From positions 1-64,000 of the IMG/VR virus record IMGVR_UViG_3300023199_000204: a stretch of 64,000 bases of DNA. One strand, 5' to 3'. A program made the translations under genes and the position numbers. The notes beneath the pieces are model-generated. The model was not told where the DNA came from. It saw only the letters and a program-made list of their open reading frames with translations, and did no database searches. Shown here one piece after another: positions 2-15,837 of the stretch (positions are counted from its first letter, which is position 1; every line of letters starts with the position of its first letter).

Positions 2-1117
2 CGTGAACTAGTTAAAGAAGCTATGGGCGAAGATATGCTATCATTAGAAGACGATCTTGATTCTGATTTAGGAGATTCCGATTTAGGGGATTCTGATTTA
101 GGGGATTCTGATTTAGGGGATTCTGAAGATTTTGAAGCAGAGCTTGATAAACTAATGTCAGAGGTTAGGGAGTTAAGTGGTGATGTTGATTCATTAGAAG
201 CGGATGTTGATGGAATTAAAGAAATGGAAGAAAAAGAGCCGTGGCATGGAGATCTTCAGGTTGAAGAAGAAGCAAATGATATGTCTCTAGACCAAGAGCT
301 TGCGGCTATGTTAGCTGATGATGGAGACGAAGAAGATAAAGAAGAAGACGAAGAAGATGAGTCAGATGCCAACGATAGTTTAGTTTCTTCTGCTTCAAAG
401 CGTCGTGCTTGGAGAGAAAAAGTAGCGGCAGAATATCAGCTTAAACTAAATCCTCAAACTACTGCTGATACCGATATGCCTCTTGCTCAAAGTGCAAACT
501 TGGGTCAATTATCAACAAGCCCATCTGATGATGGAGCTAAAGTTGAGGGATTGGTGGAGATGCACGAGAAGTTCTTGAGAGAGATTAATAGTCTACCTCA
601 GGTTCGCGAAGCTGTTGAGAAGATTACTTCTTTGATTAAATCTGGAAAACTAAATATTGCTGATCTAGATAATTCTGAAAAACTCAAGGCACTTGCTGTT
701 GATCCAGCTGCTGCGAAATATTACAAAGATTATTTTGGTCAAGCGGATCCGAAAAGCAGTGAGTTTGCCAATGAGCTAGTAAAAGAATTTGGTAAAAAGA
801 AAGTAGAGGCTAGCCTTGATGAGCAGAGACTAAAAATGCGTCGTGCTTATGATGTAGCCATTGATATGCAGGAAAAGGGAATGATTCCTGACACTGTATC
901 TTCTTTACATCAACAAGTTGATGAGCTTATAAATTTTAATGATAGCCAATTTGAAAGTTTCAAAAAAGCTGTTCAACTTGCTGGAAGGCCAACCAAAGTA
1001 GCTACAGCATCTCTAAAGGTTCCAGCAATGGAAGTAGGAATCAATGAGGATGGAGTGGCAAATAACACAACTACAGCTCCTGTTAATCTAGCGGGACAAC
1101 TTAAAAGCCTATGGTAA
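2..1117 (+). CDS. Acidic capsid scaffolding/core-like protein, C-terminal part (frame open to the window edge)
   Basis: Frame is open from position 2. Very D/E-rich coiled-coil character, K-x-A sites, a segment (DGAKVEGLVEMHEK..P) resembling those in the 5559 and 9590 proteins, and a location upstream of the capsid genes. Confidence 0.55.
   Translation, partial: RELVKEAMGEDMLSLEDDLDSDLGDSDLGDSDLGDSDLGDSEDFEAELDKLMSEVRELSGDVDSLEADVDGIKEMEEKEPWHGDLQVEEEANDMSLDQELAAMLADDGDEEDKEEDEEDESDANDSLVSSASKRRAWREKVAAEYQLKLNPQTTADTDMPLAQSANLGQLSTSPSDDGAKVEGLVEMHEKFLREINSLPQVREAVEKITSLIKSGKLNIADLDNSEKLKALAVDPAAAKYYKDYFGQADPKSSEFANELVKEFGKKKVEASLDEQRLKMRRAYDVAIDMQEKGMIPDTVSSLHQQVDELINFNDSQFESFKKAVQLAGRPTKVATASLKVPAMEVGINEDGVANNTTTAPVNLAGQLKSLW
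59..127 (+). repeat. 15-bp coding tandem repeat (GATTCYGATTTAGGR) x4 plus a partial copy, encoding DSDLG
   Basis: Seen directly: units at 59, 74, 89, 104 and a partial unit at 119. Confidence 0.95.
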
Positions 1118-1120
1118 TAT

Positions 1121-1160
1121 TTTGGGGCCCTGGAAAAATGCTATAGGGCCCCAAATTTAT
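1121..1160 (+). terminator. GC-rich hairpin, probable intrinsic terminator
   Basis: TTTGGGGCCCT (1121-1131) pairs with AGGGCCCCAAA (1145-1155), just after the scaffold stop. The T tract is short. Confidence 0.65.
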
Positions 1161-1173
1161 ATCGGAGACCATA

Positions 1174-1347
1174 ATGAAACTTACAAAAAAAGAAATTAGA
1201 AGAGAAATATTAGATTTATCTTATCTTGGCCTTACAACAAATGATATAAGAGGCTATTTTGAGTTTTATAATTTTGAGATAGAAGAAGAGGAAGAAACTA
1301 AGTCTAAAACAAATAGACGATTAATTAATTCAAATAGAAAAAAATAA
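1174..1347 (+). CDS. Small hypothetical protein (57 aa, MKLTKKEIRREILDLSY...)
   Basis: Translated by hand; GGAG RBS upstream; below the ORF-track size cutoff. Confidence 0.55.
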   Translation: MKLTKKEIRREILDLSYLGLTTNDIRGYFEFYNFEIEEEEETKSKTNRRLINSNRKK

Positions 1348-1365
1348 TTCTGTGGAGGATTCACA

Positions 1366-1830
1366 ATGACAAGTCTAAAACCACAATATGTGGATGAAAT
1401 CGTAGCTTCTATGGCAGAAATGCTAGGGGACAAGGATTTTATGTCACTTCATAAAAAAGCAGCTTTGGAGAAAGTTGCCAAAAGTACTCAAGAATATCTA
1501 TCAGCATATCAGGCAGCACAATCGCTAAATGAGGTTGAAACAATTCATAATGAGGTTCAGGCAACTAGAGGGTCTAGATCTCAGCAAGAGGAAGAGGCTC
1601 TTCATAATGCTTATCAGAGTGCGAAATCTCGTTTCTCTCCTGGTGAGAAACCAGTTCCTATTATGAGTGATGATGGTCAAGCGGCTGATGACGGAAAAGA
1701 GAATGTAGCAGCTGACTTTGCTCTTAAAAATCTTTCTGAAGTAGCTGACGCACTTGATAGCAACGGTTTTGAACATCTTGCTAATTTTATTGATGAGGCA
1801 ATGACAAAAATAGCTTCAAAAAAAAAATAA
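1366..1830 (+). CDS. Putative internal head protein with LA..LD..G module; possible -1 frameshift extension to 2060
   Basis: GGAGG RBS; motif LSEVADALDSNGFEHLANFIDEAM; ends in an A10 run then TAA, with the -1 frame open to TAA at 2058-2060. Confidence 0.6.
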   Translation: MTSLKPQYVDEIVASMAEMLGDKDFMSLHKKAALEKVAKSTQEYLSAYQAAQSLNEVETIHNEVQATRGSRSQQEEEALHNAYQSAKSRFSPGEKPVPIMSDDGQAADDGKENVAADFALKNLSEVADALDSNGFEHLANFIDEAMTKIASKKK

Positions 1831-2072
1831 CAAAGTCTAAAGATGGCAAGCCTGGAAAATATAAAAACACAGGCGGTGCTCACCCACCACCCAAAAAGTG
1901 GTGGGACAAGATGTCTAAAGAGATTAAAAAAAATAATAAAGATTACTCTAAAGAGAGAATAAGAGAGACCGTGGGTGATATTTGGTATAATAAACTTAGT
2001 AATTCTAAGCGTTCTGAAATATATAAACGTCACGGAAAAAGCAAAAGCCCTAACAGGTAAGGGAGCATAACA

Positions 2073-2591
2073 GTGGTTCTTAAATATAGCGAAAAAAATA
2101 ACAATACTCTTGCTAATGCTATGGCAAGGGCTTTAAATGAAGATTTTGAAAAATTGGCAAAAACCAAATGTAAATGCGGCTGTTTTAACTGCTCTTGCGG
2201 CAAAGCCAAAAATAATGGAAAATGTCCTTGTAATTGTAAATCTTGTAAAAAAACAAAAGTGGCAGAGTTGGAAGATATATCTTATACTATTTTAAGATCA
2301 GCTGACTTATTAGACAAGGTTGGACACTATGATGCTGCTTTAAGTTTATCATATGCTTTAAAGAAATTGGCAGAGAATGGATGTAATTGCCCTGACTGTC
2401 CTGATGAAATTGAGGATATAGACTCAAAAGAAGATTTAGTATATGTAATAAGCAAGGCTTTATTTGATATTTCAGATACTTTAGATAAGCTTGGACACTT
2501 TGATGTTTCAGATAATGTTGATACTGCTCTTAAATCACTATCCGGAAAGAAATGTGATTGCGGGGGATCTTGTTGTAACGGCAACTCTTAA
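2073..2591 (+). CDS. Putative internal head protein with Cys-rich (metallothionein-like) segments and two LA..LD..G modules
   Basis: CxC/CxxC clusters alternate with SADLLDKVGHYDAA and ISDTLDKLGHFDVSDNVD. Confidence 0.55.
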   Translation: MVLKYSEKNNNTLANAMARALNEDFEKLAKTKCKCGCFNCSCGKAKNNGKCPCNCKSCKKTKVAELEDISYTILRSADLLDKVGHYDAALSLSYALKKLAENGCNCPDCPDEIEDIDSKEDLVYVISKALFDISDTLDKLGHFDVSDNVDTALKSLSGKKCDCGGSCCNGNS

Positions 2592-2602
2592 TAGGGGAGT
2601 TT

Positions 2603-3403
2603 ATGTCTAATATTAGCAAGTATATGGAAAATATAAAACTAGATGTTATTAAACTATATACTAAAGATAATTTAAGTTATAATGCTATAGCTAAAAAATT
2701 TAATGTAAGCCAACCCAGTATTAAAAAATATTTAATTAATTGGGGAGTTAAACAAAAACCAGTCTATGAACAAATGAGTTATGTATTACACGATAGACAA
2801 AAAGATGATAGGTGTTTTCCAAAAAATATTCTTAATTTATTAGAAGGTGGTTTGCTTGGTGATGGTGGAGTTTATAATACCAAACTTCAATCTTATTATC
2901 AGCACGGATGTATTAACAAAGATTATATAGATTTTTTAAAAACATATTTTAATAACAATGAAATTATAGCAAACATTTGCTCTATTGCCCCAAAAGGCAA
3001 AAGTGTTAAAAGATTTTATTGTCTAACAACCAGAAGTAGTTTATTTTTAAGGAATATTAGGAATAAGTGGTATAAAGGCAGTATTAAGATAGTTCCAGAA
3101 GATTTTGAATTATGTCCTTTATCATTAAAGCATTGGTGGATAGGTGATGGATATTTAAACCCTGATTGGGGATGGGCTACTATTGCTACGCAAAGTTTTA
3201 CAGAAAAAGAGAATATGTTTTTAAAAAATAAATTAAATAATATTACTGAACATTATATAACCTTACGTCCAAGTGGTAAAGCAGCTCCAGGTAAATTTCA
3301 TCTATATTTATCAAGAAAAGCAATAAATGATCTAATTAATTATATGGGAAGTTGTCCTGTAAAATCGTTTAAATACAAATGGAAGGTTAAAAATGGTATT
3401 TGA
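2603..3403 (+). CDS. LAGLIDADG homing endonuclease (N-terminal HTH plus two LAGLIDADG motifs)
   Basis: GGLLGDGG and HWWIGDGY motifs, ATQSFT..E; AT-rich. Confidence 0.85.
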   Translation: MSNISKYMENIKLDVIKLYTKDNLSYNAIAKKFNVSQPSIKKYLINWGVKQKPVYEQMSYVLHDRQKDDRCFPKNILNLLEGGLLGDGGVYNTKLQSYYQHGCINKDYIDFLKTYFNNNEIIANICSIAPKGKSVKRFYCLTTRSSLFLRNIRNKWYKGSIKIVPEDFELCPLSLKHWWIGDGYLNPDWGWATIATQSFTEKENMFLKNKLNNITEHYITLRPSGKAAPGKFHLYLSRKAINDLINYMGSCPVKSFKYKWKVKNGI

Positions 3404-4088
3404 AATAATACAATCAGGAAATGCTTTACCATTTTTCTATAAACTGGATCCAACTGCTACATTTGAATCAGGGCAAATTGGTCAGCTTAAGCTTATAGGA
3501 AATGATATAGTTGTAGGATTATCTGACGGAACAGCTCCTTTGGGTATTATTGATGATGTAAGAACTACAGCTTTTTCGCAACCTGTTGCCGATGAAGTTG
3601 TAATTATTCAGGGAATAGATATTACTACAGACGGCTATAATACTTACAACGGAAGAGATTCCATAGGTCCACTAGATAATTCCCCAGTTATTGGGTCAAG
3701 CTTTACTTCAGATTATCCAGATGTATCTTTAATCACAACCAATGGAAATTTAATTTTACCAGCCGGGGCAGAGCTTAATTATGATGCCGATGGAGATGGA
3801 ATAAAAGAATCTGTAAGAATGACAGTTAGTTATGTTTATCATGTGGCTGATTTACCTGGTGGAGATACTACATTAGGAAGTGGAAAAGTCACTATTTGGT
3901 TTCAAAGAGGAATTTTTGCTACGGATCAGTATGATACTACTGCCAAATATCCTTTAAACGCAGTATTATTTGTTAATTCTGAAGGAAAGCTTACCACAAG
4001 TCAAACCACTCCTGAACATCCAGGAGTTGCGATGGTTACAGGTCCTCCGGGAGCTACGATAAACACTTTAGAGTTCCTATGGCTATAA
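3393..4088 (+). CDS. Capsid decoration/cement-like protein 1
   Basis: Beta-rich; shares QSGN, SGKVT.W..G and GKLT with the gene directly upstream of the major capsid gene. Confidence 0.55.
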   Translation: MVFEIIQSGNALPFFYKLDPTATFESGQIGQLKLIGNDIVVGLSDGTAPLGIIDDVRTTAFSQPVADEVVIIQGIDITTDGYNTYNGRDSIGPLDNSPVIGSSFTSDYPDVSLITTNGNLILPAGAELNYDADGDGIKESVRMTVSYVYHVADLPGGDTTLGSGKVTIWFQRGIFATDQYDTTAKYPLNAVLFVNSEGKLTTSQTTPEHPGVAMVTGPPGATINTLEFLWL

Positions 4089-5152
4089 ATAATTATTCTT
4101 TAAATGCTAAAAGTCCAAAATGGACTAAAGAAGAAATTGAAAAATTAAAATCTGTTTATAGAGATTACACTTATAAAGATCTAAGTATTATTTTTGATAG
4201 AAGTGTAGAGGCAATTTCACAAAAACTTAGTAGTCTTGGTTATAGTAAATATAATAAATGGACTGAAGAGGAAATAAACTTACTTAAAAAAAAATATAAT
4301 ACAAGTTCTACTGAACAGCTTATAATATTGTTTCCTGCTCATACTTTAGGAAGTATTAATAAAAAGGCAGAAAAATATAATTTAAAACGTCAAAATATAA
4401 AAAGACCAAAATGGACAGATGATGAAATTGGCACCATCCAAATAATGTATGAAAAAGGGTTTTCAGTTTCAGAAATTTCAAAAAAAATTAATAGAAGTGA
4501 AATAGTAGTAAATATTGAAATTGGTTCTTATAAAGCAAAACTTAAGAAATGGACAGCACAAGAAGAAAAAATATTATTAGATAATTATAAAACTTTATCT
4601 TATAAAGAAATTTCAAATCTTCTATCTAACAAAAGTTTAAGTCAAGTTAAAAAGTATGGTAAAAAGCTTAATCTTAACAAAATTGATCCAAGAGGTGTTT
4701 GGACGGCTGAGGAAGAAAAACTTTTAATTGAAAAATATTCTATTTCAACTATAGAAGAGCTTATGAATATTTTTAAAAACAAAGCTAAGTCTCAAATATC
4801 TAAAAAAGCAAAGCATTTGAGATTAAGAAAAACTAAGAAGACATTATCTAGATGTTTTAGAACAAAAATAGATAATTATAATGATATAGTTAAAATTTAC
4901 ACTTCTTCGCGGCAACGTTGGCGTAAAATAGTTTTAAAAAGAGATAATTATACTTGTGTTGATTGTAATTTAAAAGACATTACTGGTTTAATATTACAAA
5001 TTCATCATATTATTCCTGTAAGAAGTTGTAGTAGTAAAGAACAGATTATAGATATTAAAAATGGTATTACTCTGTGTATAGATTGTCATAATAAAGTGAC
5101 AGGTAGAGAGTATAAATTTATAGAAAAGTATCAAAACTTAGTTGAGTTATAA
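4079..5152 (+). CDS. HNH endonuclease with N-terminal W-T-x-E-E (Myb/SANT-like) repeats
   Basis: Five WTxxE repeats; C-terminal RDNYTCVDC..HHIIP..NGITLCIDCH. Confidence 0.85.
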   Translation: MAINNYSLNAKSPKWTKEEIEKLKSVYRDYTYKDLSIIFDRSVEAISQKLSSLGYSKYNKWTEEEINLLKKKYNTSSTEQLIILFPAHTLGSINKKAEKYNLKRQNIKRPKWTDDEIGTIQIMYEKGFSVSEISKKINRSEIVVNIEIGSYKAKLKKWTAQEEKILLDNYKTLSYKEISNLLSNKSLSQVKKYGKKLNLNKIDPRGVWTAEEEKLLIEKYSISTIEELMNIFKNKAKSQISKKAKHLRLRKTKKTLSRCFRTKIDNYNDIVKIYTSSRQRWRKIVLKRDNYTCVDCNLKDITGLILQIHHIIPVRSCSSKEQIIDIKNGITLCIDCHNKVTGREYKFIEKYQNLVEL

Positions 5153-5167
5153 GCCTAGGAGGAATAA

Positions 5168-5569
5168 ATGTCTTTTTCAAAAGAAGATAAAGCTGCTTGG
5201 AACAACAGCGAAATAATGCAGGAGTTTGAAAAAATTGCTGCGGAAATGGAAATTTTTAATGGACCTCCTGAGGAGGCATATCTTCCAATCAAAAATGCTG
5301 ATGACGATTGGGAAGATGAAATTAATGATGATGTTGAAAACAAAAATATTGAAGCGGAAAATAAGAAAGAGGATTTTTTAAAAATAGCAGAATTTGAAAA
5401 AAACTTGCTAGAAAAAAAGAAAACAGTAGATGATAAATTAATCAATGATTTGCGAACCTTGTCCGAAAAATTAATTTCAAAAAGAAAAATTGAGGCAGCA
5501 TATAAAGTGGAGAGGGCCATTTTAGATATTGAGGCACATCTTCAGACGGAGGAAAATAATGACATTTAA
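5168..5569 (+). CDS. Putative internal head protein
   Basis: AGGAGG RBS; N-terminal W..SEIMQEFEKIAAE shared with the 5559 and 9590 proteins; degenerate helical module at the C-terminus. Confidence 0.55.
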   Translation: MSFSKEDKAAWNNSEIMQEFEKIAAEMEIFNGPPEEAYLPIKNADDDWEDEINDDVENKNIEAENKKEDFLKIAEFEKNLLEKKKTVDDKLINDLRTLSEKLISKRKIEAAYKVERAILDIEAHLQTEENNDI

Positions 5570-8500
5570 TTATAGTGGAACAAGTGTTATGGAAGAATTG
5601 GAGAAAATTGCTATAGAAAAAAAATGGCTAACTGTAGAGGCAGGTCCAGACGCAGGTTTAATTAAATCAATTCAGCAGCAAATGAATGAGTTGGTTGGAA
5701 GATTACATAAACCAATGCCTCCTCAATATAATGTATTTCCTCTTGATGTTGATGGTGTTTTTGGACCAAAATCGACAAAAGGTATTAGAGGAATTATGCT
5801 TGTTGCCCAAGATGCTGTTAAAAACACTCCTAATAGACATATGCCTCAACACAGAGAGTTAATTACTGGTATAAGTGAAATGAGCAGGGGGACTCCAGAC
5901 GCTCTTTTAACTGGTCTTAAATATTTAAATAAATATTTTTATGAGAATTGGGGAGAGAAAATTAAACAAAAGGAGCCTCAAATTAAACTTCCTGAATGGG
6001 CAAAAAATAAGCCAGCACCAGTGGGAGATGGAACTGATGAGCCAGACTGGGAGGCACCTGCCGATGATGAAAAAAAATCTTGTTTACATAGCGAAGAGTG
6101 TCCACCAGGTCAGCGTTGTTATCAAGGATATTGCGAAGAATATATGGAAGAAAGCCCAATTAAAGGGGCGTCAAATAAAACTAACTTGGAGAAAATTGCT
6201 ATGAATCCTCGCGAATGGTTTAACAGCTTAGACTACAACACTCAGAGCAGAGTGAGAAGAAAAGTATATGAATTAATGAAAGGAAGAGGTTTTGATCAGG
6301 AAGGGGCTCTTGGAATGGTAATGAGACAAATGAATCCTCCTGAACCAAAACAAAAGCCTCCTCTTAAACAAGAGTGGCCTGATACGCCTGATTTTAATCC
6401 AGATGATTTTTTACGAGAAGTGGAAAGGGGTGTTCAGGAACAATATCCTTCTTTTAAAATGACCTCTTCTGTTATAAACAGTTTGGTTTCTCTTGCCAAT
6501 GATTTAGATGATATGGGAGCAAAAGAGGCTTCTTTTTCTGTTGATAATCAAATTAAGATATATAAAGAAGCTCTTGATAAGCTTTATGATGTAACTGGAG
6601 AAACTGGAGAGCAACTTATTGAAAAAGCACATCCCGGCGGAGGTCCAACAATTGCTCCTTCAAAAGAAGAGGGTGGCAAAGTTGAGACAGTTGTTGAGGA
6701 GCAGAAAAAATCAATTGACAAGGCGACCAAAAAGCCAACTGGAAAATATGCTCAAACAGTGTCAAAACTAATTGCTTTGGCAAATAAGCTTGAAGATGAA
6801 GGGAATGTTAAAGCCGCATTACAAGTGGATGAGTCAATACGGGAAATGAGGGCCTTGCTCCCTTTTTCAAATAGGAGTTCAGTAATTGAGGCAGCTGGCT
6901 CCGAGGACAAAAAAGCCTCGGTTGTTAAGAAAGGTTTTAGTCTTACGGAGACATTGGAAACAGATATAAATGATTATGCTATAGTTCTTGGAATAATGTA
7001 TAAACTGAATCAAGAGCAAAGACCATTGTATTCAGGAGCTTATAAAAACCTTAAAAACCTTTTGTTGAAATATTTATCTAAAGCTAAATATTATGAAAAT
7101 TATTCAAAACAAAGTAATGCCAAAAACTATCACCAATTAATTATATACTATAATAATTTAGAACGGTTTACTAAAAAAATTGTTGATAATTCTGGGACTA
7201 TGTCAGATATGGGAATGTTTTCTATAAGATTAGCATCTCATTTAAGAAGTATTCAAGAAGGGTTAGTTTATCTTGGGAAAGCTATGGATTCATTTGATTA
7301 TACTACTTCACCAAAAAAAGCTCTTGAGCCTCTTTCTGGAAATTCAAGACAAAGGGCAATAAAATCTTATTTAAAAGATCTTAAAACACTAGAAAATTTA
7401 ATACAAACTCAAGATCCAGTAAAAGTTGGTAAAATTTTAAATGGCGGTCTCAAGGCTATAGACCAGCTAGAGAAATGGATTGAAAAAAGAAGATATAATC
7501 TTACAGTTACTGATGGAAACGATAGTTATATTGGTGATAAACTTGAATTGCCTCATATTACACAGTTAAGAAATTATATTTCTAAGTTACAGAAGGGTTT
7601 AGGAAAAACTTCTGGAATAAAGTTTTATAAATTTGTCAAAACTGCTCTTGATGGCGCACCACCAGTTGGCATTGGAGGCGGATCTGCCACTCCACGAAGA
7701 AGAACAAGAAGTGTTGTTAATAGGAAGCCAAAAGACCAACAAGTGGTTAAATTACAGAGGGCTCTTAAAAAAGCAAATTTTGATACTGGCAAAATAGATG
7801 GATATTGGGGAAAAAACACTGCTGCGGCTTTTAACGCAATGCTGGCAAAACTTGGGCAATCAAGGGGCAGAGCTTTCAAACAGTTTAGTGGTGATAAAAA
7901 ACCCAATCCAAAGGTTTTAAGATTTGGAATATATGCTGCCAATTTATATCAAAGAAAAGATATTCCAAAAGGAAGATTTTTTGTTCTTACTGATACTGGA
8001 GAAATAGATTTGCCATTATCTGCATTAAATAGTCCTTCTAGTTTTATTGGGGCTCTGGAACTAAATTCCGTTATAAGGAAAGATCTTTCGGCAGAGGAAA
8101 AGGTTAAAGCAGCCGAAAAAGTTTTAATATTTACTGCTAAGAAATTAAATCCTCCAGATAAAGCTCCATATGTTTTGGGCAGAGTTGAAGACTTAATGGA
8201 TCTAAGTTATATTGATAAAGCTAAAAATAATTTAAGGCTTTTGAATAAAGCATATGTTATGTTAAAACCGTTTGTCTTAAAAGTAAAAAACAAAGAAAAG
8301 GTTGATGAAAAATCTTTAAAACAGAATAAGTTAAAACCTTCTGTTAAAAGCCCTTCTGCTAAAAGAAGTGTTAAACAAAAATTAGAAAAAGCTATGTTAA
8401 AAATTATGCCTGAGCCTGGGCAACTAACAAGCCTTGAATCTTTTGAACGACTTGCTCAAGTAAATAATATGACTGCTAGAGAATATTATCCACTATTAAA

Positions 8501-8648
8501 AAGCAGAATTGTTGGTGTTATGAGATTTATGAAAAACAATAAATCACAGCTTGTTGCTGAGCTTGGTTCTGATGGATTTTTAGATAAGTGGTGGAAATTA
8601 GAAAGAGTAAGCCGTGATCTTGATAGGTTAAAAGCTGCTATCAGATAA
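5559..8648 (+). CDS. Large putative internal/ejection protein with two peptidoglycan-binding-like domains
   Basis: Start moved to ATG 5559 (GGAGG RBS). PG_binding_1-like segments IQQQMN..VDGVFGPKS and LQRAL..IDGYWGKNT; two LA..LD..G modules; a small CxxxxECPPGQRCxxGxC motif. Confidence 0.6.
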   Translation: MTFNYSGTSVMEELEKIAIEKKWLTVEAGPDAGLIKSIQQQMNELVGRLHKPMPPQYNVFPLDVDGVFGPKSTKGIRGIMLVAQDAVKNTPNRHMPQHRELITGISEMSRGTPDALLTGLKYLNKYFYENWGEKIKQKEPQIKLPEWAKNKPAPVGDGTDEPDWEAPADDEKKSCLHSEECPPGQRCYQGYCEEYMEESPIKGASNKTNLEKIAMNPREWFNSLDYNTQSRVRRKVYELMKGRGFDQEGALGMVMRQMNPPEPKQKPPLKQEWPDTPDFNPDDFLREVERGVQEQYPSFKMTSSVINSLVSLANDLDDMGAKEASFSVDNQIKIYKEALDKLYDVTGETGEQLIEKAHPGGGPTIAPSKEEGGKVETVVEEQKKSIDKATKKPTGKYAQTVSKLIALANKLEDEGNVKAALQVDESIREMRALLPFSNRSSVIEAAGSEDKKASVVKKGFSLTETLETDINDYAIVLGIMYKLNQEQRPLYSGAYKNLKNLLLKYLSKAKYYENYSKQSNAKNYHQLIIYYNNLERFTKKIVDNSGTMSDMGMFSIRLASHLRSIQEGLVYLGKAMDSFDYTTSPKKALEPLSGNSRQRAIKSYLKDLKTLENLIQTQDPVKVGKILNGGLKAIDQLEKWIEKRRYNLTVTDGNDSYIGDKLELPHITQLRNYISKLQKGLGKTSGIKFYKFVKTALDGAPPVGIGGGSATPRRRTRSVVNRKPKDQQVVKLQRALKKANFDTGKIDGYWGKNTAAAFNAMLAKLGQSRGRAFKQFSGDKKPNPKVLRFGIYAANLYQRKDIPKGRFFVLTDTGEIDLPLSALNSPSSFIGALELNSVIRKDLSAEEKVKAAEKVLIFTAKKLNPPDKAPYVLGRVEDLMDLSYIDKAKNNLRLLNKAYVMLKPFVLKVKNKEKVDEKSLKQNKLKPSVKSPSAKRSVKQKLEKAMLKIMPEPGQLTSLESFERLAQVNNMTAREYYPLLKSRIVGVMRFMKNNKSQLVAELGSDGFLDKWWKLERVSRDLDRLKAAIR

Positions 8649-8663
8649 AGGTGGGAGAATTTA

Positions 8664-9593
8664 ATGATGACACTTTCTCTACGAGAGGAACGACAACTGT
8701 TGCCACTGTTGGTTAAAGAAGCCGCCATACCTGAATTTCTTGGCGGCTTTTTAAAAACAATAAAAGATAAGACATCATTTCTGTCAAAACCTTTTGAGAG
8801 TTTTTTGGGAACAGTTGGAATTATTGTTGTTGGCAGAATAAGCAAAATTCTGGGATTTCTGGCTTTAATTGGCGAATATTACGGCTTTGGATTAAGTTCT
8901 ATTGGAAAAATGATAGATACTTCTTTAGGATTTAATACCGGGAAACCAAAAATATCTTTATCTGATATAAAAAAAACAGCAAAAGGTGTTATTGACACCA
9001 TTGCTAAAAAAATTGGTTTAAAAGAGGCGGAATTTAAAAACGAATATCTTTTATCAAAGCGGGCAGGGCTTGGAACATTTTTGGGACAAATTTTTAGAGC
9101 AAAGAGATTAAGTTTTGTTAGTATTTTATATGGTTTTATAAGAACATTTGTTAAAGGTTTAATTGCTGCTGGGCTTATTGGTGGTTTAGCTTCTATGACT
9201 GGTCAAAGACCAGCGCCTCCAGTGGGCGGGAAGTCAAAAAGTCTTACAGGGAAATTACAATACTATAAAAATGTTTCTAACAATGTTGAAGATACTTTAA
9301 TAAAATTCCTAAACGCAGAAATAGCAAACTTTTCAAGAGCCTTCGAAGCACAAAAGGGGAGACCATTAAAAGGCTCTTCTGAATTACAAAAAGTATTATA
9401 TAATATAGAAATATTAAATTATGGGAAAAATATTTCTGATTTAAATTTAAGAGATGCTTTTATTGGTCCAGATGTTAAAACTTTGGCAAAAAAGATTTTA
9501 CCAAAAGTTAATTATCAGCCTTTAGCTTCTTCTTCTTCTACAAAAAAAACAAAAGAACTTTTAAAACTTTTAAACGAGGTGAAAAAAAAATGA
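8664..9593 (+). CDS. Putative internal/ejection protein with hydrophobic Gly-rich helices
   Basis: KEAA, KEA and KRA sites; hydrophobic segments such as FLGTVGIIVVG..ILGFLALIG and GLIAAGLIGGLA. Confidence 0.5.
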   Translation: MMTLSLREERQLLPLLVKEAAIPEFLGGFLKTIKDKTSFLSKPFESFLGTVGIIVVGRISKILGFLALIGEYYGFGLSSIGKMIDTSLGFNTGKPKISLSDIKKTAKGVIDTIAKKIGLKEAEFKNEYLLSKRAGLGTFLGQIFRAKRLSFVSILYGFIRTFVKGLIAAGLIGGLASMTGQRPAPPVGGKSKSLTGKLQYYKNVSNNVEDTLIKFLNAEIANFSRAFEAQKGRPLKGSSELQKVLYNIEILNYGKNISDLNLRDAFIGPDVKTLAKKILPKVNYQPLASSSSTKKTKELLKLLNEVKKK

Positions 9594-10963
9594 CCGGACA
9601 ATGGCACGGTAGTGATGTTATGGCTGGCTTTGCCAAAATAGCTGCCGAATCTGGGCTCATTACCTCAGATTTTAATCCGGATAATAAAGATTTCCTTGGA
9701 AATCCAAGTGAAAAAACTCCGGTGAAAGATAAAACAAGGTATGAGCCAACAGAAGATTATAATAATAGATATAATAAAGAGGGTGAAAAGCTTATAGATA
9801 AAGCACATCCTAAAAATGTGGAAGTGGCCGACGCGATGGGCAAAGGTGGTCTCGTTGAAAACGAGAACCAGAGGCAAGAAAAAGATATTGAAGTGGCAAC
9901 AAGAATGCCAAGTGGAGCATTATTTGGAATTCACGCAGATTTAATTAATGATTTGGTAAAACTTGCTAACAAGCTAGATGATGTTGGAAATTATAAAGCA
10001 GCAAGTTTAGTTGATAAAACCATTAGGGAGGTTCGCGGTCTCCCTTTTGATAAAGGCCACTCCATACAGAAAGAAGCAGCTCTATTTGGTCTTGTAGCAC
10101 TAGTTGCTGGTTTAGCACTTCCTTGGATTGCGACAAAACTAAAATTTAGATCTCCTTATGCTAGAAAATCAGGATTAACAGGAAAGCTTGGTTGGATAAG
10201 TGCTGGTGTAGGACTACTTAACCTATTTGGATCTAAACTTACAAGTATCAAAGAAAATCTAAATACTGATTTACAAGATTTATATGATGTTTTGGAAAAA
10301 CTAGATACACCCTCTTCAAAAAAAGCTATAATGATATTAAAGCCACATTTAAATAAGTTTTCAAAAATTAATTTAAGCACAAAAGAGGGTGCGGCCCAGT
10401 TTTTAAATAACTTTCATAAACTAAGTCAGGCTTATCCACAGGTAGAGGCATTAATTAATAATATTATTATTGAATATCAAAGTAATTGGTTTGATAAGTT
10501 AAAAGGATATGTTGGAATGGATGTATTATCCAGATTTAAGGAAAAATATTCAGATTTTAAGACAACATATAAAGAGACACAAGCTTTGGTTAATAAAACT
10601 TTAAAGGTCGGTGGAAAATTAAACCGCAAAGCTATCTCTCTAGGGGGAGCAGCTTCTGGGACCAAACCTTTTTCTCCTAAAGTTATAAGTGATAAACCAA
10701 TTTACAGACTACAGAGATTATTATTTGAAAGTGGATTTAGAGGAAAGAAATGGGAAGGAAAAATTAGTGGAGAATTGGATCAGGCTACTGTAACTGCTGC
10801 CAAAGAACTGGAAAGTCTTTTAAACGCAGCAATGTCGAAAATGCTTAAAAAGAATAATAAAGACCCAGATTTTTTCAACAACTCTATTATAAAAGATGGA
10901 AAGTTAGTAGGCAATGTTAATTCTTTATATAAAGTTATTCAAATTGCTGAAAATATATCATAA
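9590..10963 (+). CDS. Putative internal/ejection protein (paralogous segment with 5559; TM-like helices; PG-binding-like C-terminus)
   Basis: GEKLIDKAHP...GGLVE...LVKLANKLDDVGNYKAASLVDKTI; KEAA followed by hydrophobic LFGLVALVAGLALPW. Confidence 0.55.
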   Translation: MTGQWHGSDVMAGFAKIAAESGLITSDFNPDNKDFLGNPSEKTPVKDKTRYEPTEDYNNRYNKEGEKLIDKAHPKNVEVADAMGKGGLVENENQRQEKDIEVATRMPSGALFGIHADLINDLVKLANKLDDVGNYKAASLVDKTIREVRGLPFDKGHSIQKEAALFGLVALVAGLALPWIATKLKFRSPYARKSGLTGKLGWISAGVGLLNLFGSKLTSIKENLNTDLQDLYDVLEKLDTPSSKKAIMILKPHLNKFSKINLSTKEGAAQFLNNFHKLSQAYPQVEALINNIIIEYQSNWFDKLKGYVGMDVLSRFKEKYSDFKTTYKETQALVNKTLKVGGKLNRKAISLGGAASGTKPFSPKVISDKPIYRLQRLLFESGFRGKKWEGKISGELDQATVTAAKELESLLNAAMSKMLKKNNKDPDFFNNSIIKDGKLVGNVNSLYKVIQIAENIS

Positions 10964-10964
10964 A

Positions 10965-10985
10965 CTACTAATATTTTATTATAAT
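10965..10985 (+). promoter_or_regulatory. Candidate late promoter CTACTAAT-N7-TATAAT
   Basis: The same motif with the same spacing recurs in other intergenic gaps (18426, 19027, 27424, 46438). Confidence 0.65.
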
Positions 10986-11061
10986 TTACGAAATCTCGAA
11001 TAATAACGGGATATAACGATCAAAGATACAATATAAATATATTTCTTTGGAGGAAATAAAA

Positions 11062-11703
11062 ATGGCATTATACATCTACCAATCGGGCAATGAGCCCCTA
11101 GGTCAATTTGACGTTCTTGACTCATACCAGAGCAGCATTCTTGGTGGTGAGATTGGAACAGTATATGAGGCATCCAGAACTGTAACTGCTTCAGAAAAAG
11201 CCGCATACGACGTTCTTGACGGCTACACTAACACTACTGACGTAACTCGTGCTGGTGTTGCTAATAGAGTTAATACTAATGGACAGCGTCCACTATGGCT
11301 TCTTGATGAAGGAACTACAGGATATGGAACTCTTTTTGGTCAGGTAATTGGAACTCCTACAGGTCTTAGCACCTCTGGAACCAACCTTGGCCCACACACT
11401 TCTGCCGCAAGTGGTAAAGTCACCTGCTGGAATAAACCAGGTCTTTATGCAGTATCACTAGATGCTGTAAATACTGCTTCTGACGGAATTGTTCTTTCAA
11501 ACGTTTCTATGGATCCAGGTTTAGCATTACAACCGCTTAACAACGGTAAGCTAACCCCAACTGGTTCTTCAGGTGCTGTAAACGTAACTGTTGGACACTT
11601 CGTAGAGTTTGAAACTTCACCATTCTTGGTGACAACTCCACCTTCACTAGTTGGAGCCGCTGAAGCAGCAGAGAGAGCTGTATTTAACTTTTTAGCACTG
11701 TAA
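11062..11703 (+). CDS. Capsid decoration/cement-like protein 2
   Basis: Start moved to ATG 11062 (GGAGG RBS). Directly upstream of the major capsid gene; high-expression-type codon usage; paralogous to 3393. Confidence 0.6.
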   Translation: MALYIYQSGNEPLGQFDVLDSYQSSILGGEIGTVYEASRTVTASEKAAYDVLDGYTNTTDVTRAGVANRVNTNGQRPLWLLDEGTTGYGTLFGQVIGTPTGLSTSGTNLGPHTSAASGKVTCWNKPGLYAVSLDAVNTASDGIVLSNVSMDPGLALQPLNNGKLTPTGSSGAVNVTVGHFVEFETSPFLVTTPPSLVGAAEAAERAVFNFLAL

Positions 11704-11726
11704 TTTAAGAGAATAAGAGGATAATA

Positions 11727-11749
11727 TGGGGAGTTTAATAAACTCCCCA
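11727..11749 (+). promoter_or_regulatory. Intergenic hairpin upstream of the major capsid gene (possible mRNA stabiliser or processing site)
   Basis: TGGGGAGTTT-AAT-AAACTCCCCA with no U-tract. Confidence 0.55.
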
Positions 11750-11790
11750 AATCCTAAAAAAATTTTTTCACATAGGAGGACAAAGATACT

Positions 11791-12822
11791 ATGTCTTTAT
11801 TTAGTACACATGGAAAGGGAGGCGAGCTTAATGTTGGTTCAACTCGCGATGCCCTTCAACAAATTGTAAAATATGCAACTATTTTAGAAGATTTGCAGCC
11901 AGCAAATACTGCTTTGGCTCAGAGACCCTCATTTTCTGATCAACAGAGAGATGAGCTAGTAAAAAGAGCACTTTTAACCACAGAGGGCAAAATTGCTTTA
12001 GGTCAGGCAATGGCTAACCCCATTAGAAAGAACCTTGATTATCAAGGGGTAGGAAGAAGAGTTCTTGTTGTAGACCCGTTACCACAGGGAGCACTCCCAG
12101 TTTACGAGCGTGACATTGATGTTGCTGCTACTGTTGTTTCAAGCAATGGTTCAGCACCTGAGAGTCGCGTATTCGGTGACAGGGTAACTATTCCTGAGTT
12201 TGAAGTTGTTTCAAACCCGACAGTAAGAATTGCTGAAGTTCGCAGACGTAGATTCAACGTCATTGACCGTGCCCAGCAGAAAGCTCGCCAAGAAATCCAG
12301 GCTCAAGAGGATGCCAACATCTTCTCAGCTCTTGATTTCGCAGCTGACTCAACTCTTGGTGGTGAAAACACTGCTCAGGACATTGCGGACGCTGGTCTTC
12401 TAAAGCGCGACCTTTCTGAAATTAAGGTTCAGGTTGATCGTTGGGACCTTGTAACCACAAAATTCCTTATGAATATCGTTGAATACAATGATATCCTAAA
12501 CTGGGCAACTGGTGGCGGACAAGGAACTGGTGGTGGCGAGGTTGATCCTGTCACTATGCGTGAAATCCTACAGACTGGTCTTTATGCCCATCTTTGGGGT
12601 GCTGACATCATCGTTTCAAAGGTTGTTCCTCAGGGAACTGTCTTCGGTGTTGCCGATCCTGAGTTTATTGGTGTAATGCCTGTAAGACAGGATATTGAAG
12701 TACTTCCTGCAGACGAGCCTAAACAGTTAAAACTTGGCTGGGTAGTAAACGAAATTATTGGTGTTGGCATTGTCAACTCCCGTGGTTGTGCTGTTGGTCG
12801 TAAATCAGTAGCTGTTGGCTAA
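11791..12822 (+). CDS. Major capsid protein (HK97-like fold)
   Basis: 343 aa; PIRKNLDYQGVGRR.LVVDPLPQG.LP.Y, A.QEIQAQED..IF, G.YAHLWGADIIVS..VP.G and LGWVVNE.IG motifs typical of large-phage capsid proteins; strongly biased codons; followed by a terminator. Confidence 0.85.
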   Translation: MSLFSTHGKGGELNVGSTRDALQQIVKYATILEDLQPANTALAQRPSFSDQQRDELVKRALLTTEGKIALGQAMANPIRKNLDYQGVGRRVLVVDPLPQGALPVYERDIDVAATVVSSNGSAPESRVFGDRVTIPEFEVVSNPTVRIAEVRRRRFNVIDRAQQKARQEIQAQEDANIFSALDFAADSTLGGENTAQDIADAGLLKRDLSEIKVQVDRWDLVTTKFLMNIVEYNDILNWATGGGQGTGGGEVDPVTMREILQTGLYAHLWGADIIVSKVVPQGTVFGVADPEFIGVMPVRQDIEVLPADEPKQLKLGWVVNEIIGVGIVNSRGCAVGRKSVAVG

Positions 12823-12848: not shown

Positions 12849-12884
12849 GATAAAGGGGCTTTGTTCCCCTTTATCTTTTTTTTT
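12849..12884 (+). terminator. Rho-independent terminator after the major capsid gene
   Basis: GATAAAGGGG / CCCCTTTATC stem followed by T9. Confidence 0.9.
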
Positions 12885-12930
12885 GTCGATAAGAGCGACC
12901 CACACCAAATATAACTCGTTAGGAGGTTGG

Positions 12931-13899
12931 GTGATGGGGAAAAGATTATTTACGAAAAGGGAATTATTAAGAAAATTGGTGGAATTTTCTAAAAAGGTAA
13001 ATAAGAGTAGAATTTCAAAAACCGATTTAGACAAAGATAAAGCATTTCCATCTTCGGCAACATATAAGAGATATTTTGGTAGTTGGAGCAATGCTTTAAA
13101 GTTAGCTAAATTAAAATCTGGAATAATTACTGGAAGACCACAGGATAAGGAGATAATAATTCCAGACAAAGCGTTAGATATAATAAATGGAGAATTATTA
13201 GGTGATGGCTCAATGCCTTTAGGCGGGGAATATAAAAGCAATGCTTATTTTGAGCATTCAACAGCGAATATAGATTATGGAAAATATTTATATAATAAGC
13301 TTAAAAATTATGTTCCATTATTAAATTCCTCATATTGCCCTAAAAGAAATAAGAGATGTAATATTCAATTTAGAACAAGAAGTAGGGTTAATATTGCTTG
13401 GACTAAAATTAGAAACAAATGGTATATTAATGGAAAAAAAATAATACCAAATGATTTAATTCTCACAAAAGAGGTTTGTCTTCATTGGTATTTAGGTGAC
13501 GGATACAGTGAGGATAAGACTTGTAAATTTTCTACTTGTGGATTTACTAAAAAAGAGAACGAAAAATTATGCGAACTATTGTTAAACATTGGCTTTAAAT
13601 CAAACATTAATAAAAGAAGCGGTGGTTATTATATTATAAGAATGAGAAGAAGCAGTTCATTTAAATTTTTAGATTGGTTAGGTCCTTGTCCAGCGAAAGG
13701 ATATGAGCATAGATGGAATATTGGAGAAAAATCCAAGTTATTAACTAAAAAAGATTTAGAAACAGCATTTAAGAAATTTAATAAATCGGTTACAAGAAAA
13801 GAGTTTGATGCTGATAAAGATGTTCCTTCGTCTATAACAGCTATTAGATTATTTGGAAGTTGGAATAAGGCAAAGGAATTTTATTATGAAAATAAGTGA
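12931..13899 (+). CDS. LAGLIDADG endonuclease flanked by homing-endonuclease-associated (PS...FGSW) repeats
   Basis: GELLGDGS and HWYLGDGY motifs; PSSATYKRYFGSW and PSSITAIRLFGSW repeats; AGGAGG RBS before GTG/ATG at 12931/12934. Confidence 0.8.
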   Translation: MMGKRLFTKRELLRKLVEFSKKVNKSRISKTDLDKDKAFPSSATYKRYFGSWSNALKLAKLKSGIITGRPQDKEIIIPDKALDIINGELLGDGSMPLGGEYKSNAYFEHSTANIDYGKYLYNKLKNYVPLLNSSYCPKRNKRCNIQFRTRSRVNIAWTKIRNKWYINGKKIIPNDLILTKEVCLHWYLGDGYSEDKTCKFSTCGFTKKENEKLCELLLNIGFKSNINKRSGGYYIIRMRRSSSFKFLDWLGPCPAKGYEHRWNIGEKSKLLTKKDLETAFKKFNKSVTRKEFDADKDVPSSITAIRLFGSWNKAKEFYYENK

Positions 13900-15773: not shown

Positions 15774-15837
15774 GCGACTTTAATAAAAAATGTAGCTGTT
15801 GTGGAGATTTTTATAATACAAGGGGAAGTAAAGGCAA

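What the first reader, a model, noticed from the sequence alone, without database searches (positions are those of the whole stretch)
400..11900. Recurrent K-x-A sites: a candidate prohead-protease cleavage code, including the capsid N-terminus
Head-region proteins are punctuated at domain boundaries by K-[IVTEYLK]-A: EKVAA and TKVAT (scaffold); KKAALEKVA and TKIAS (1366); EKLA and TKVA (2073); EKIAA and LKIA (5168); EKIA x2, YKEA, GKYA and VKTA (5559); VKEAA and LKEA (8664); AKIAA and QKEAA (9590); and IVKYA near residue 28 of the major capsid protein. In 9590, KEAA directly precedes the hydrophobic helix, as expected if cleavage frees a membrane-active mature protein. T4 gp21 and phiKZ gp175 cleave many head proteins after short motifs ending in Glu. 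An Ala-ending K-x-A code would be a different specificity.
Basis: inference. Interest (0 to 1): 0.7.

Follow-up and report, generated by a model that had tools for sequence, protein, structure and literature searches.

The report
Candidate head-protease cleavage tag in megaphage
Head-gene proteins of this huge phage and about 80 uncultivated relatives share a short tag (hydrophobic-x-Lys-x-Ala), mostly near their N-termini and repeated through the scaffold, which most likely marks where the capsid-maturation protease cuts, though no cutting has been shown.

Summary
The actual motif is longer: [LFIMV]-x-K-x-A.

- **Window.** Eight head proteins carry 19 copies against 6.4 expected. The rest of the 316-kb contig sits at chance (104 against 99.5).
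- **Relatives.** In 200 head-module proteins from 80 related viral contigs, K-x-A is the most over-represented of all gapped residue pairs. The five-residue motif is 8.5-fold enriched at residues 7-45. Proteins encoded downstream of the capsid gene show no enrichment.
- **Scaffold and protease.** Whole copies in relatives keep K-x-A right after the protease domain and 30-37 residues from the C-terminus. This layout resembles the release and maturation sites of herpesvirus assemblin, which cuts after Ala.
- **Cultivated relatives.** Phage G and Tunturi 5 show the same tag.

The best reading is an N-terminal targeting helix followed by a protease site, with multiple sites in the scaffold. Cleavage itself is untested, and the scissile bond could lie after Ala or after Lys. 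About half of the listed sites are not conserved. I rate it a new variant of a known kind, of moderate interest, testable by mass spectrometry on phage G.

The parts
2..1117 (+). C-terminal 371 residues of a protease-scaffold fusion protein, truncated by the contig start. The protease domain lies off the contig.
   Evidence: The frame is open from base 2. Relatives carry whole ORFs of 1,289-1,385 aa. Their N-terminus matches phage G gp19 (40-44% identity), phrog_18299 head maturation protease and NF045541. Their C-terminus matches this ORF.
413..427 (+). REKVA site between the acidic linker and the conserved scaffold core.
   Evidence: Conserved as W/R-R-E-[KR]-[VI]-A-A-E in the three close relatives with whole fusions, but not in distant ones.
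989..1003 (+). PTKVA site 37 residues before the scaffold C-terminus. This is the analogue of the herpesvirus maturation (M) site.
   Evidence: All 18 fusion proteins have K-x-A 30-37 residues from the C-terminus, followed by a polar linker and a conserved L..LW tail. Tunturi 5 gp332 has PTKVAS about 20 residues from its end.
1366..1830 (+). Small head-module protein with the motif at K30 (1447-1461), K36 (1465-1479) and K148 (1801-1815).
   Evidence: K30 is kept at the same column in 4 of 7 homologs, 5 of 7 within four columns. It ends a conserved N-terminal segment (ADEI..AMA..LGD..F..L.K.A) and variable sequence follows.
2073..2591 (+). Cys-rich head-module protein with the motif at K27 (2145-2159) and K98 (2358-2372).
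   Evidence: No homolog in the 80 related loci, so conservation is untestable.
5168..5569 (+). Small acidic head protein with an N-terminal helix SEIMQEFEKIAAE. Motif at K22 (5225-5239) and K72 (5375-5389).
   Evidence: The helix is conserved in 8 homologs. K22-x-A is kept in 4 of 7; K72 is not conserved.
5529..8648 (+). Internal head protein of 1,039 aa (start at 5529 or 5559) with a peptidoglycan-binding domain. N-terminal helix SVMEELEKIAIE. Motif at K26 (5598-5612), K222 (6186-6200), K346 (6558-6572) and K704 (7632-7646).
   Evidence: PF01471 match. K26 is kept in 4 of 5 homologs and K346 in 5 of 5; the others are not conserved.
8664..9593 (+). Hydrophobic (membrane-like) head protein. Motif at K18 (8709-8723), K104 (8967-8981) and K132 (9051-9065).
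   Evidence: Five of seven homologs have K-x-A (one more has R-E-A, one K-E-G) within the first 35 residues, after N-terminal leaders of varying length and sequence.
9590..10963 (+). Head protein with N-terminal helix SDVMAGFAKIAAE, a repeated hairpin domain, then a hydrophobic segment. Motif at K16 (9629-9643), K124 (9953-9967, inside the domain) and K161 (10064-10078, just before the hydrophobic segment).
   Evidence: K16 is kept in 9 of 11 homologs. K161 is kept in 7 of 11, with R-x-A in one more, although local identity is only 0.26.
11791..12822 (+). Major capsid protein (HK97-type, phrog_2522) with a 45-residue N-terminal extension absent from phage G gp27. Motif at K27 (11863-11877) and K58 (11956-11970).
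   Evidence: phrog_2522 at E = 5e-76. 53% identity to phage G gp27 / PDB 6wkk from residue about 45. K27 and A29 are invariant in 23 relatives, and A60 is invariant including phage G.
3393..4088 (+). Conserved beta-rich head-module protein with no K-x-A at all. Probably an exterior capsid protein and a negative case.
   Evidence: 0 sites. Homologs in 40 loci at 50-65% identity.
11047..11703 (+). Protein encoded just upstream of the capsid gene, in the position of a decoration protein. It lacks the five-residue motif.
   Evidence: Conserved in 77 loci. No detectable similarity to phage G gp26.

Best explanation
[LFIMV]-x-K-x-A is the recognition motif of this phage lineage's capsid-maturation protease.

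The protease is the N-terminal domain of a roughly 1,300-residue protease-scaffold polyprotein. The window's first ORF is its C-terminal end.

Most proteins that go inside the prohead carry an N-terminal tag. The tag is a short amphipathic helix, probably the part that docks them to the scaffold core, followed within 0-15 residues by the motif. After shell assembly the protease would do four things (all inferred):
1. Cut off these N-terminal tags.
2. Release itself from the scaffold at a site just after the protease domain.
3. Chop the scaffold at several internal sites.
4. Detach the scaffold's capsid-binding C-terminal tail at a site 30-37 residues from the end.

The capsid protein's N-terminal extension would be removed at K27-Y-A29, at K58-R-A60, or at both.

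**Shown:** the motif, its enrichment, its position, its conservation, and the fusion architecture in relatives.

**Inferred:** that it is cut at all; that the cut follows Ala (hydrophobic = P5, Lys = P3, Ala = P1); and that the helix is a targeting signal.
For: - **Enrichment restricted to head-module proteins.** In the window, 19 copies against 6.4 expected, with the rest of the genome at 1.04x. In relatives, 463 against 158.7 (z = 24), with downstream proteins at 1.18x.
- **K-x-A is the top pattern.** It leads all gapped pairs in 200 proteins of relatives.
- **Position.** The motif is 8.5-fold enriched at residues 7-45. 62% of upstream proteins have K-x-A at residues 9-43 against 24% in shuffles. 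Downstream proteins stand at 12% against 12%, and the window's other ORFs at 12% against 13%.
- **Controls near 1.** The reversed motif, R or E in place of K, S or G in place of A, and a shifted hydrophobic residue give 0.7-1.35x.
- **Spacing.** The i, i+2, i+4 spacing is that of side chains on one face of an extended strand. It matches the P3-x-P1 logic of SPN3US gp245, which cuts after A-X-E (PMC10052503).
- **The motif moves independently of the helix.** Where the helix has R-I-A or N-I-A instead of K-I-A, a new hydrophobic-x-K-x-A appears a few residues downstream, followed by variable or Pro-rich sequence.
- **Fusion protein.** K-x-A is conserved right after the protease domain (15 of 17), before a Pro-rich linker (14 of 17), and 30-37 residues from the C-terminus (18 of 18).
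- **Residue after Ala.** It is A, S or G in 46% of N-terminal sites.
- **Same tag in cultivated relatives.** Phage G gp9, gp13, portal gp14, protease gp19 and gp20 carry it. Tunturi 5's capsid protein has LLKSA at its N-terminus, and its scaffold-like gp332 has 16 K-x-A against 5.6 expected.
- **Negative cases.** Two proteins lack the five-residue motif (3393 has no K-x-A at all); by their position and beta-rich sequence I take them to be exterior capsid proteins.
Against: - There are no protein-level data; no mature N-terminus is known for any member.
- In three families, and in the capsid protein, the K-x-A lies inside a predicted helix. The capsid model shows a helix at 18-34 but at pLDDT 38. 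Proteases prefer extended segments.
- Many sequences are paralogs or orthologs, so the counts overstate the number of independent events.
- Only about half of the window's K-x-A sites are conserved.
- Phage G's capsid protein, said to be processed (my recollection of the abstract of Gonzalez et al. 2020, which is not held), has no K-x-A.
- The protease-peptide co-fold gave no answer.
- The protease model was too poor to examine its pockets.
Confidence: 0.6

Rival explanations
1. The motif is part of a non-cleaved docking or targeting element. An N-terminal amphipathic helix and similar helices in the scaffold bind the scaffold core, the portal or the inner capsid surface. K and A are contact residues, and nothing is cut there.
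For: S-E-V-M-x-E-F-x-K-I-A-x-E is a conserved amphipathic helix shared by three paralogous families. The capsid protein's K27-A29 lies in a predicted helix (low confidence). In T4 the first residues of the capsid targeting sequence act in targeting, separately from the processing residues (PMC9026906).
Against: The i, i+2, i+4 spacing does not fit a helical face, which would use i, i+3/4, i+7. The motif keeps its identity while its distance from the helix varies between 0 and about 15 residues. It also occurs where no helix tag exists, for example after the protease domain and before Pro-rich linkers.
Confidence: 0.2
2. It is a protease site, but the cut follows Lys (hydrophobic = P3, Lys = P1, Ala = P2'). 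That would be a Lys-specific capsid protease rather than an Ala-specific one.
For: L-x-K is enriched almost as strongly as K-x-A (z = 11.3 against 11.8). The protease domain matches NF045541, a prohead protease/major capsid protein fusion family. HK97 gp5 is reported to be cut after Lys103; this is from my memory and was not checked here.
Against: Hydrophobic-x-K without Ala at +2 is not enriched (1.1x), so Ala is needed as much as Lys. At conserved sites Lys is replaced (mostly by Arg) a little more often than Ala (41 against 29 cases), and Ala is often replaced by small residues such as V, S, T or G. That pattern fits a small S1 pocket.
Confidence: 0.15
3. It is a chance or compositional artefact of Lys- and Ala-rich helical proteins, inflated by shared ancestry.
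For: Within the window alone, K-x-A ranks only 4th of 1,074 patterns and would fail Bonferroni correction. The related loci are phylogenetically non-independent.
Against: Per-protein shuffles control for composition. A-x-K, K-x-x-A and the reversed five-residue motif are not enriched. The N-terminal positional bias is absent from 293 downstream proteins and from 300 other ORFs of the same genome. The motif recurs in at least six unrelated sequence contexts and in phage G and Tunturi 5.
Confidence: 0.05

Closest known systems
Herpesvirus assemblin-scaffold polyprotein (pUL26/pUL26.5; release site and maturation site, cut after Ala)
   Same: The protease is fused N-terminally to the scaffold. 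One site lies just after the protease domain. Another lies near the scaffold C-terminus and would remove the capsid-binding tail: pseudorabies virus removes 37 residues at VQA|S and has its release site at YLQA|T (PMC4498786), and the window's PTKVA also leaves 37 residues. The recognition unit is x-x-Ala followed by a small residue.
   Different: There is no detectable sequence similarity to herpesvirus proteases. The third-last position is Lys rather than Val/Leu/Gln. A further hydrophobic residue two positions earlier is required. Many other head proteins carry the site. Cleavage is not demonstrated here.
T4 gp21 with the capsid targeting sequence of internal proteins IPI-III
   Same: A short N-terminal tag shared by otherwise unrelated internal head proteins combines targeting residues with a protease site at its end. 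The scaffold core is cut at many sites, and the protease processes itself (PMC9026906).
   Different: T4 cuts after Glu in L/I-x-E. The T4 tag is 10 residues, whereas here it is 15-40. The T4 protease is a separate protein.
phiKZ gp175 / SPN3US gp245 giant-phage prohead proteases
   Same: Many head proteins (capsid, portal, ejection proteins) are processed at a P3-x-P1 motif with a small residue preferred after the cut, and N-terminal propeptides are removed (PMC10052503).
   Different: Their motif is A-X-E. A-x-E is not enriched here.
Phage protease-scaffold fusions (lambda gpC/Nu3, P2 gpO)
   Same: Protease and scaffold lie in one reading frame with self-processing (from my own knowledge, not checked here).
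   Different: Those proteins are 3-4 times shorter, and their cleavage motifs are not K-x-A to my knowledge.
Bacillus phage G head module (gp14 portal, gp19 protease, gp20, gp21, gp27 capsid protein; PDB 6wkk)
   Same: It is the closest cultivated relative: capsid protein 53% identical and protease domain 40-44% identical. N-terminal hydrophobic-x-K-x-A is present on gp9, gp13, gp14, gp19 and gp20, and gp19 has two copies in its C-terminal tail.
   Different: In phage G the protease (gp19) and the scaffold-like gp21 are separate genes. The capsid protein lacks the 45-residue N-terminal extension and any K-x-A.

Membership tests
Prohead-protease cleavage code (T4 / phiKZ type system) | A capsid-maturation protease encoded in the head module | tested here: inconclusive
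   It is not on the contig: PF04586 and phage G gp19 found nothing. However, the window's first ORF is open to base 2. In all five relatives searched, the homologous ORF starts with a domain matching phage G gp19, phrog_18299 and NF045541.
Prohead-protease cleavage code (T4 / phiKZ type system) | A short motif over-represented in head proteins and not in other proteins of the same phage | tested here: met
   19 against 6.4 in head proteins and 104 against 99.5 elsewhere. In relatives, 2.9x upstream against 1.18x downstream of the capsid gene.
Prohead-protease cleavage code (T4 / phiKZ type system) | Sites near the N-termini of substrates (propeptides), with multiple sites in the scaffold and in the protease itself | tested here: met
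   8.5-fold enrichment at residues 7-45. Conserved sites flank the protease domain and run through the scaffold part.
Prohead-protease cleavage code (T4 / phiKZ type system) | Mature virion proteins begin or end at the motif | not testable with these tools
   This needs mass spectrometry or Edman sequencing. The one paper likely to hold such data for phage G is not in the library.
Herpesvirus assemblin (peptidase family S21) polyprotein | Protease fused to the scaffold, with a site after the protease domain and a site 25-40 residues from the C-terminus | tested here: met
   Seen as a sequence architecture in 17-18 relatives' fusion proteins. The window holds only the C-terminal site, at 989-1003.
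Herpesvirus assemblin (peptidase family S21) polyprotein | Sequence or fold homology to assemblin with a Ser-His-His triad | tested here: inconclusive
   No Pfam or PDB sequence match. His147 and Ser198 are invariant in 16 sequences. The AF2 model reached only pLDDT 51, and Foldseek gave nothing significant; T4 gp21 (5jbl) appeared at E about 1. I treat the resemblance as an analogy, not as membership.
HK97-type prohead protease (Pfam Peptidase_S78; NCBIfam NF045541) | Profile match above the family threshold | tested here: inconclusive
   PF04586 gave no match. NF045541 matched 15 of 16 members at E about 1e-8, but only over its protease part and far below the whole-protein cut-off. phrog_18299 matched at E = 1e-10 to 3e-19.
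T4-like capsid targeting sequence | An N-terminal tag shared by otherwise unrelated internal head proteins and ending in the protease site | tested here: met
   The S-E-V-M-x-E-F-x-K-I-A helix occurs in 54 of 200 proteins from several families, and other helix types are followed by the same motif.
T4-like capsid targeting sequence | The tag is sufficient to load a foreign protein into the head | not testable with these tools
   This needs a fusion-protein packaging experiment in a cultivated relative.

The most novel reading that the evidence does not exclude
A widespread lineage of huge phages (the phage G relatives) matures its capsid with a 1,300-residue protease-scaffold polyprotein. It would work like herpesvirus pUL26: self-release after the protease domain, removal of a roughly 35-residue capsid-binding tail, and cutting after Ala. 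The same hydrophobic-x-K-x-A site, placed behind a short N-terminal helix, would be a portable "load into the head, then trim" tag. That tag would let the packaged and ejected proteome of uncultivated megaphages be read from sequence alone.
Probability: 0.35. Interest if true: 0.7.

Novelty: new variant of a known kind. Interest (0 to 1): 0.55.

Why it matters
Prohead proteases of tailed phages and herpesviruses share a fold. The experimentally defined phage specificities I could check cut after Glu (T4, phiKZ, SPN3US), while herpesviruses cut after Ala. A phage lineage with an Ala-ending site and a herpes-like protease-scaffold polyprotein would link the two systems functionally.

In practice, a validated tag would predict which proteins are packed inside the heads of uncultivated 300-460 kb phages, including the membrane-active and peptidoglycan-binding proteins encoded at 5529, 8664 and 9590. 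By analogy with the T4 targeting sequence, it could also serve as a handle for loading foreign proteins into such heads. The prediction can be tested directly in two cultivated phages, phage G and Tunturi 5.

Tried and rejected
- **Protease on the contig.** PF04586 and phage G gp19 found nothing, and the last 20 kb holds no head genes. The contig is a linear fragment, and the protease lies off its 5' end.
- **Related loci from single proteins.** Searches with the scaffold fragment and with 9590 found none. The capsid protein worked.
- **phiKZ-type A-x-E as the real motif.** I considered this because K-I-A-x-E is common in the N-terminal helix. I rejected it: A-x-E occurs 16 times against 16.7 expected in the window and at 1.08x in relatives.
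- **AlphaFold2 model of the capsid protein.** Mean pLDDT was 38, so only a tentative helix at 18-34 could be read.
- **AlphaFold2 model of the protease domain.** Mean pLDDT was 51. Foldseek against the PDB gave nothing significant, with T4 gp21 at E about 1. A profile search of PDB sequences also found nothing. The pockets could not be modelled.
- **Protease plus capsid N-terminus co-fold.** The result was "no answer", which is evidence neither way.
- **Literature.** Gonzalez et al. 2020 (phage G virion mass spectrometry) is not held. Searches for phage G cleavage data or for an Ala-specific phage protease found nothing usable. The Tunturi paper has no proteomics.
- **Similarity among the motif-free proteins.** 3393 against 11047 gave only a 21-residue match at E = 9e-4. 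11047 against phage G gp26 gave none.

Full report
**What the window is.**
The window is the first 64 kb of a 316,473-bp linear viral contig from IMG/VR, which is a fragment. The region 1-12.8 kb is a head-assembly module. It ends in an HK97-type major capsid protein at 11791-12822 (phrog_2522, E = 5e-76). This protein is 53% identical to gp27 of Bacillus phage G, whose structure is PDB 6wkk. Eighty related viral contigs, some up to 459 kb, carry capsid proteins 68-90% identical with a syntenic head module.

**The observation.**
- In the seven head proteins, K-x-A occurs 37 times against 22.6 expected from per-protein shuffles (p about 0.001). K-[IVL]-A occurs 13 times against 4.5. The rest of the genome is at 0.94x.
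- In an unbiased scan of 1,074 gapped residue pairs in the window's head proteins, K-x-A ranks fourth (z = 3.4).
- The independent test is the relatives. In 200 de-duplicated proteins encoded upstream of the capsid gene, K-x-A is the single most enriched pattern (949 against 648, z = 11.8), closely followed by L-x-K. Among 293 proteins encoded downstream it is at 0.91x.

**The real motif.**
- Splitting the sites shows that only [LFIMV]-x-K-x-A is enriched: 2.9x overall, and 8.5x (128 against 15.0) at residues 7-45.
- K-x-A without the hydrophobic residue (0.99x) and hydrophobic-x-K without Ala (1.1x) are at chance.
- In the window the five-residue motif occurs 19 times in eight head proteins against 6.4 expected (z = 5.2, none of 3,000 shuffles). 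It occurs 104 times against 99.5 in the other 458 ORFs.
- The reversed motif, Arg or Glu for Lys, Ser or Gly for Ala, and a shifted hydrophobic residue all give 0.7-1.35x.
- Seven of the nine non-endonuclease proteins between 1366 and 12822 carry the motif at residues 7-45, against 12 of 372 other ORFs (p = 8e-9).
- The two without the motif are 3393 and 11047. They are beta-rich proteins in positions typical of exterior capsid proteins.

**Context of the sites.**
Sixty-two percent of upstream proteins in the relatives have K-x-A at residues 9-43, against 24% in shuffles. The figures are 12% against 12% for downstream proteins and 12% against 13% for the window's other ORFs.

Typically an amphipathic helix comes first, then the motif, then variable, acidic or Pro-rich sequence. 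Three helix types recur:
- S-E-V-M-x-E-F-x-K-I-A-x-E in the 5168, 5529 and 9590 families;
- G-D-x-I-A-x-E-F..L-L in 1366-like proteins;
- S-E-I-F-D-x-Y in others.

Where the helix has R-I-A or N-I-A instead of K-I-A, a new hydrophobic-x-K-x-A appears up to about 15 residues downstream. The motif therefore behaves as its own unit and not merely as part of the helix. The residue after Ala is A, S or G in 46% of cases.

Sequence becomes more polar after the site: the hydrophobic fraction falls from about 0.33 before to 0.26 after. This effect is modest.

**Which window sites are conserved.**
- Well kept: 1366 K30; 5168 K22; 5529 K26 and K346; the N-terminal site of 8664 (by eye 5 of 7 homologs with K-x-A, plus one R-E-A and one K-E-G); 9590 K16 (9 of 11) and K161 (7 of 11, plus one R-x-A, at local identity 0.26, directly before the hydrophobic segment); and capsid K27/A29 (invariant in 23 sequences).
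- Not kept: most of the 14 K-x-A sites in 5529; 5168 K72; 8664 K104, K120 and K132; 9590 K136 and K244.
- 9590 K124 (LVKLAN) lies inside a domain repeated in 5529 and in many relatives' proteins.

**The protease.**
- The first ORF is open from base 2, so it is truncated by the contig start.
- In relatives the homologous protein is 1,289-1,385 residues long.
- Its first roughly 280 residues are 40-44% identical to phage G gp19.
- They match phrog_18299 "head maturation protease" and NCBIfam NF045541 "prohead protease/major capsid protein fusion" in 15 of 16 members.
- They contain an invariant Asp-His at 146-147 and Ser-Met-Gly-Thr at 198-201.

Across 17-18 such proteins, K-x-A is conserved at several points:
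- before the protease core (RFTK[YLF]A, 17 of 17);
- immediately after the protease domain (IMKTA-CG or ELKRA-GC, 15 of 17);
- before a Pro-rich linker (LLK[TSG]A-Q, 14 of 17);
- at several places in the scaffold part;
- 30-37 residues from the C-terminus in all 18, followed by a polar linker and a conserved L..LW tail.

The window's copy of the last site is PTKVA at 989-1003, 37 residues from the end.

**How it most likely works.**
The pattern matches what is known for capsid-maturation proteases.
- T4 internal proteins carry a 10-residue N-terminal capsid targeting sequence. Its early residues target and its residues 8 and 10 direct cutting by gp21 (PMC9026906).
- SPN3US gp245 cuts nine head proteins after A-X-E (P3-P2-P1) with Ser preferred after the cut (PMC10052503).
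- Herpesvirus pUL26 is a protease-scaffold fusion cut after Ala at a release site and at a maturation site. In pseudorabies virus the maturation cut removes 37 C-terminal residues that bind the capsid protein (YLQA|T and VQA|S; PMC4498786).

I therefore read hydrophobic-x-K-x-A as P5-P4-P3-P2-P1 of the protease site. Its alternate-residue spacing is typical of an extended substrate strand. The N-terminal helix would be the loading tag. This is inference; nothing here shows a cut.

For the capsid protein there are two candidate sites:
- K27-Y-A29 lies inside the 45-residue extension that phage G lacks.
- K58-R-A60 has an Ala invariant even in phage G. Tunturi 5 has LLKSA four residues away in the alignment.

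**Reach of the motif.**
- Phage G head-module proteins gp9, gp13, gp14 (portal), gp19 (three N-terminal and two C-terminal copies) and gp20 carry it. Of the phage G proteins gp28-gp54 that I examined, only gp38 does.
- In Tunturi 5 (an Acidobacteriota phage) the "DNA ejection protein" has 19 K-x-A against 8.8 expected, and the scaffold-like gp332 has 16 against 5.6, including PTKVAS near its end. The preceding residues there are often P-T rather than hydrophobic.

**Limits.**
- The structure predictions were poor.
- The fold search and the co-fold gave nothing usable.
- I could not read the one paper likely to hold phage G cleavage data, so the motif may already be known for phage G.
- Counts from related contigs are not phylogenetically independent.
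- The scissile bond could follow Lys instead of Ala. Lys and Ala are lost at similar rates at conserved sites (41 against 29), with Lys going mostly to Arg and Ala mostly to small residues such as V, S, T or G.

**Verdict.**
The motif is real, specific and conserved, and it is most plausibly a capsid-protease and targeting code with a specificity different from T4 and phiKZ. It sits in a herpes-like protease-scaffold polyprotein architecture. It is a new variant of a known kind and is directly testable in phage G.

Noticed in passing
window 50-130: Four tandem DSDLG repeats form an acidic low-complexity linker in the scaffold part of the fusion protein. Relatives have long Lys/Glu/Asp-rich linkers at the same place.
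   Followed up: partly
window 2603-3403, 4079-5152, 12883-13899: Free-standing homing endonuclease genes sit inside and just after the head module: LAGLIDADG_2, HNH with Myb-like repeats, and LAGLIDADG_2 with an HNH_repeat. In relatives L002 and L020 the flanking head genes are adjacent with no such inserts.
   Followed up: partly
window 13853-18351 (GC 26%): A low-GC block of small ORFs is followed by an 837-aa protein with repeated Cys/His modules (DUF723). Further on, 23090-24421 holds five DUF4379 treble-clef zinc-finger repeats (E = 2.5e-90). These look like more mobile-endonuclease-type genes.
   Followed up: no
window 2073-2591: A Cys-rich 172-aa head-module protein (CKCGCFNCSCGK..., C-terminal CDCGGSCC) has no homolog in any of the 80 related loci. 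It contains two copies of the L..LD..GH.D hairpin motif. A 1366-like paralog in L005 (1941-2591) has a CCHC zinc-knuckle-like CGKFGHEQKNC.
   Followed up: no
window 6550-6850 (5529 residues about 340-440) and 9780-10040 (9590 residues about 65-150): The two proteins share a domain (AHP...GG.VEN...L..LANKLD..G....A..VD..I) that recurs in one or more head-module proteins of 67 of the 80 loci. Its function is unknown. 5529 also has a PG_binding_1 domain, and the C-terminus of 9590 resembles one by eye.
   Followed up: partly
window 19372-21648: This 758-aa ORF has about 47% GC in a 33% GC genome and carries a concanavalin-A-like lectin (Laminin_G_3) domain at its C-terminus. It may be a laterally acquired receptor-binding or decoration protein.
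   Followed up: no
window 3393-4088 and 11047-11703: These two beta-rich head-module proteins lack the five-residue motif (3393 has no K-x-A at all). They share similar N-termini (QSGN.LP..F) and a 21-residue match at E = 9e-4. They may be distant paralogs forming exterior capsid decoration.
   Followed up: partly
whole contig (G000): CheckV completeness is given as 18% for a 316-kb contig. A 442-kb relative is rated 100% and a 340-kb relative 84%. Either the estimate is off or the full genome is very large. The last ORF also runs off the 3' end.
   Followed up: no
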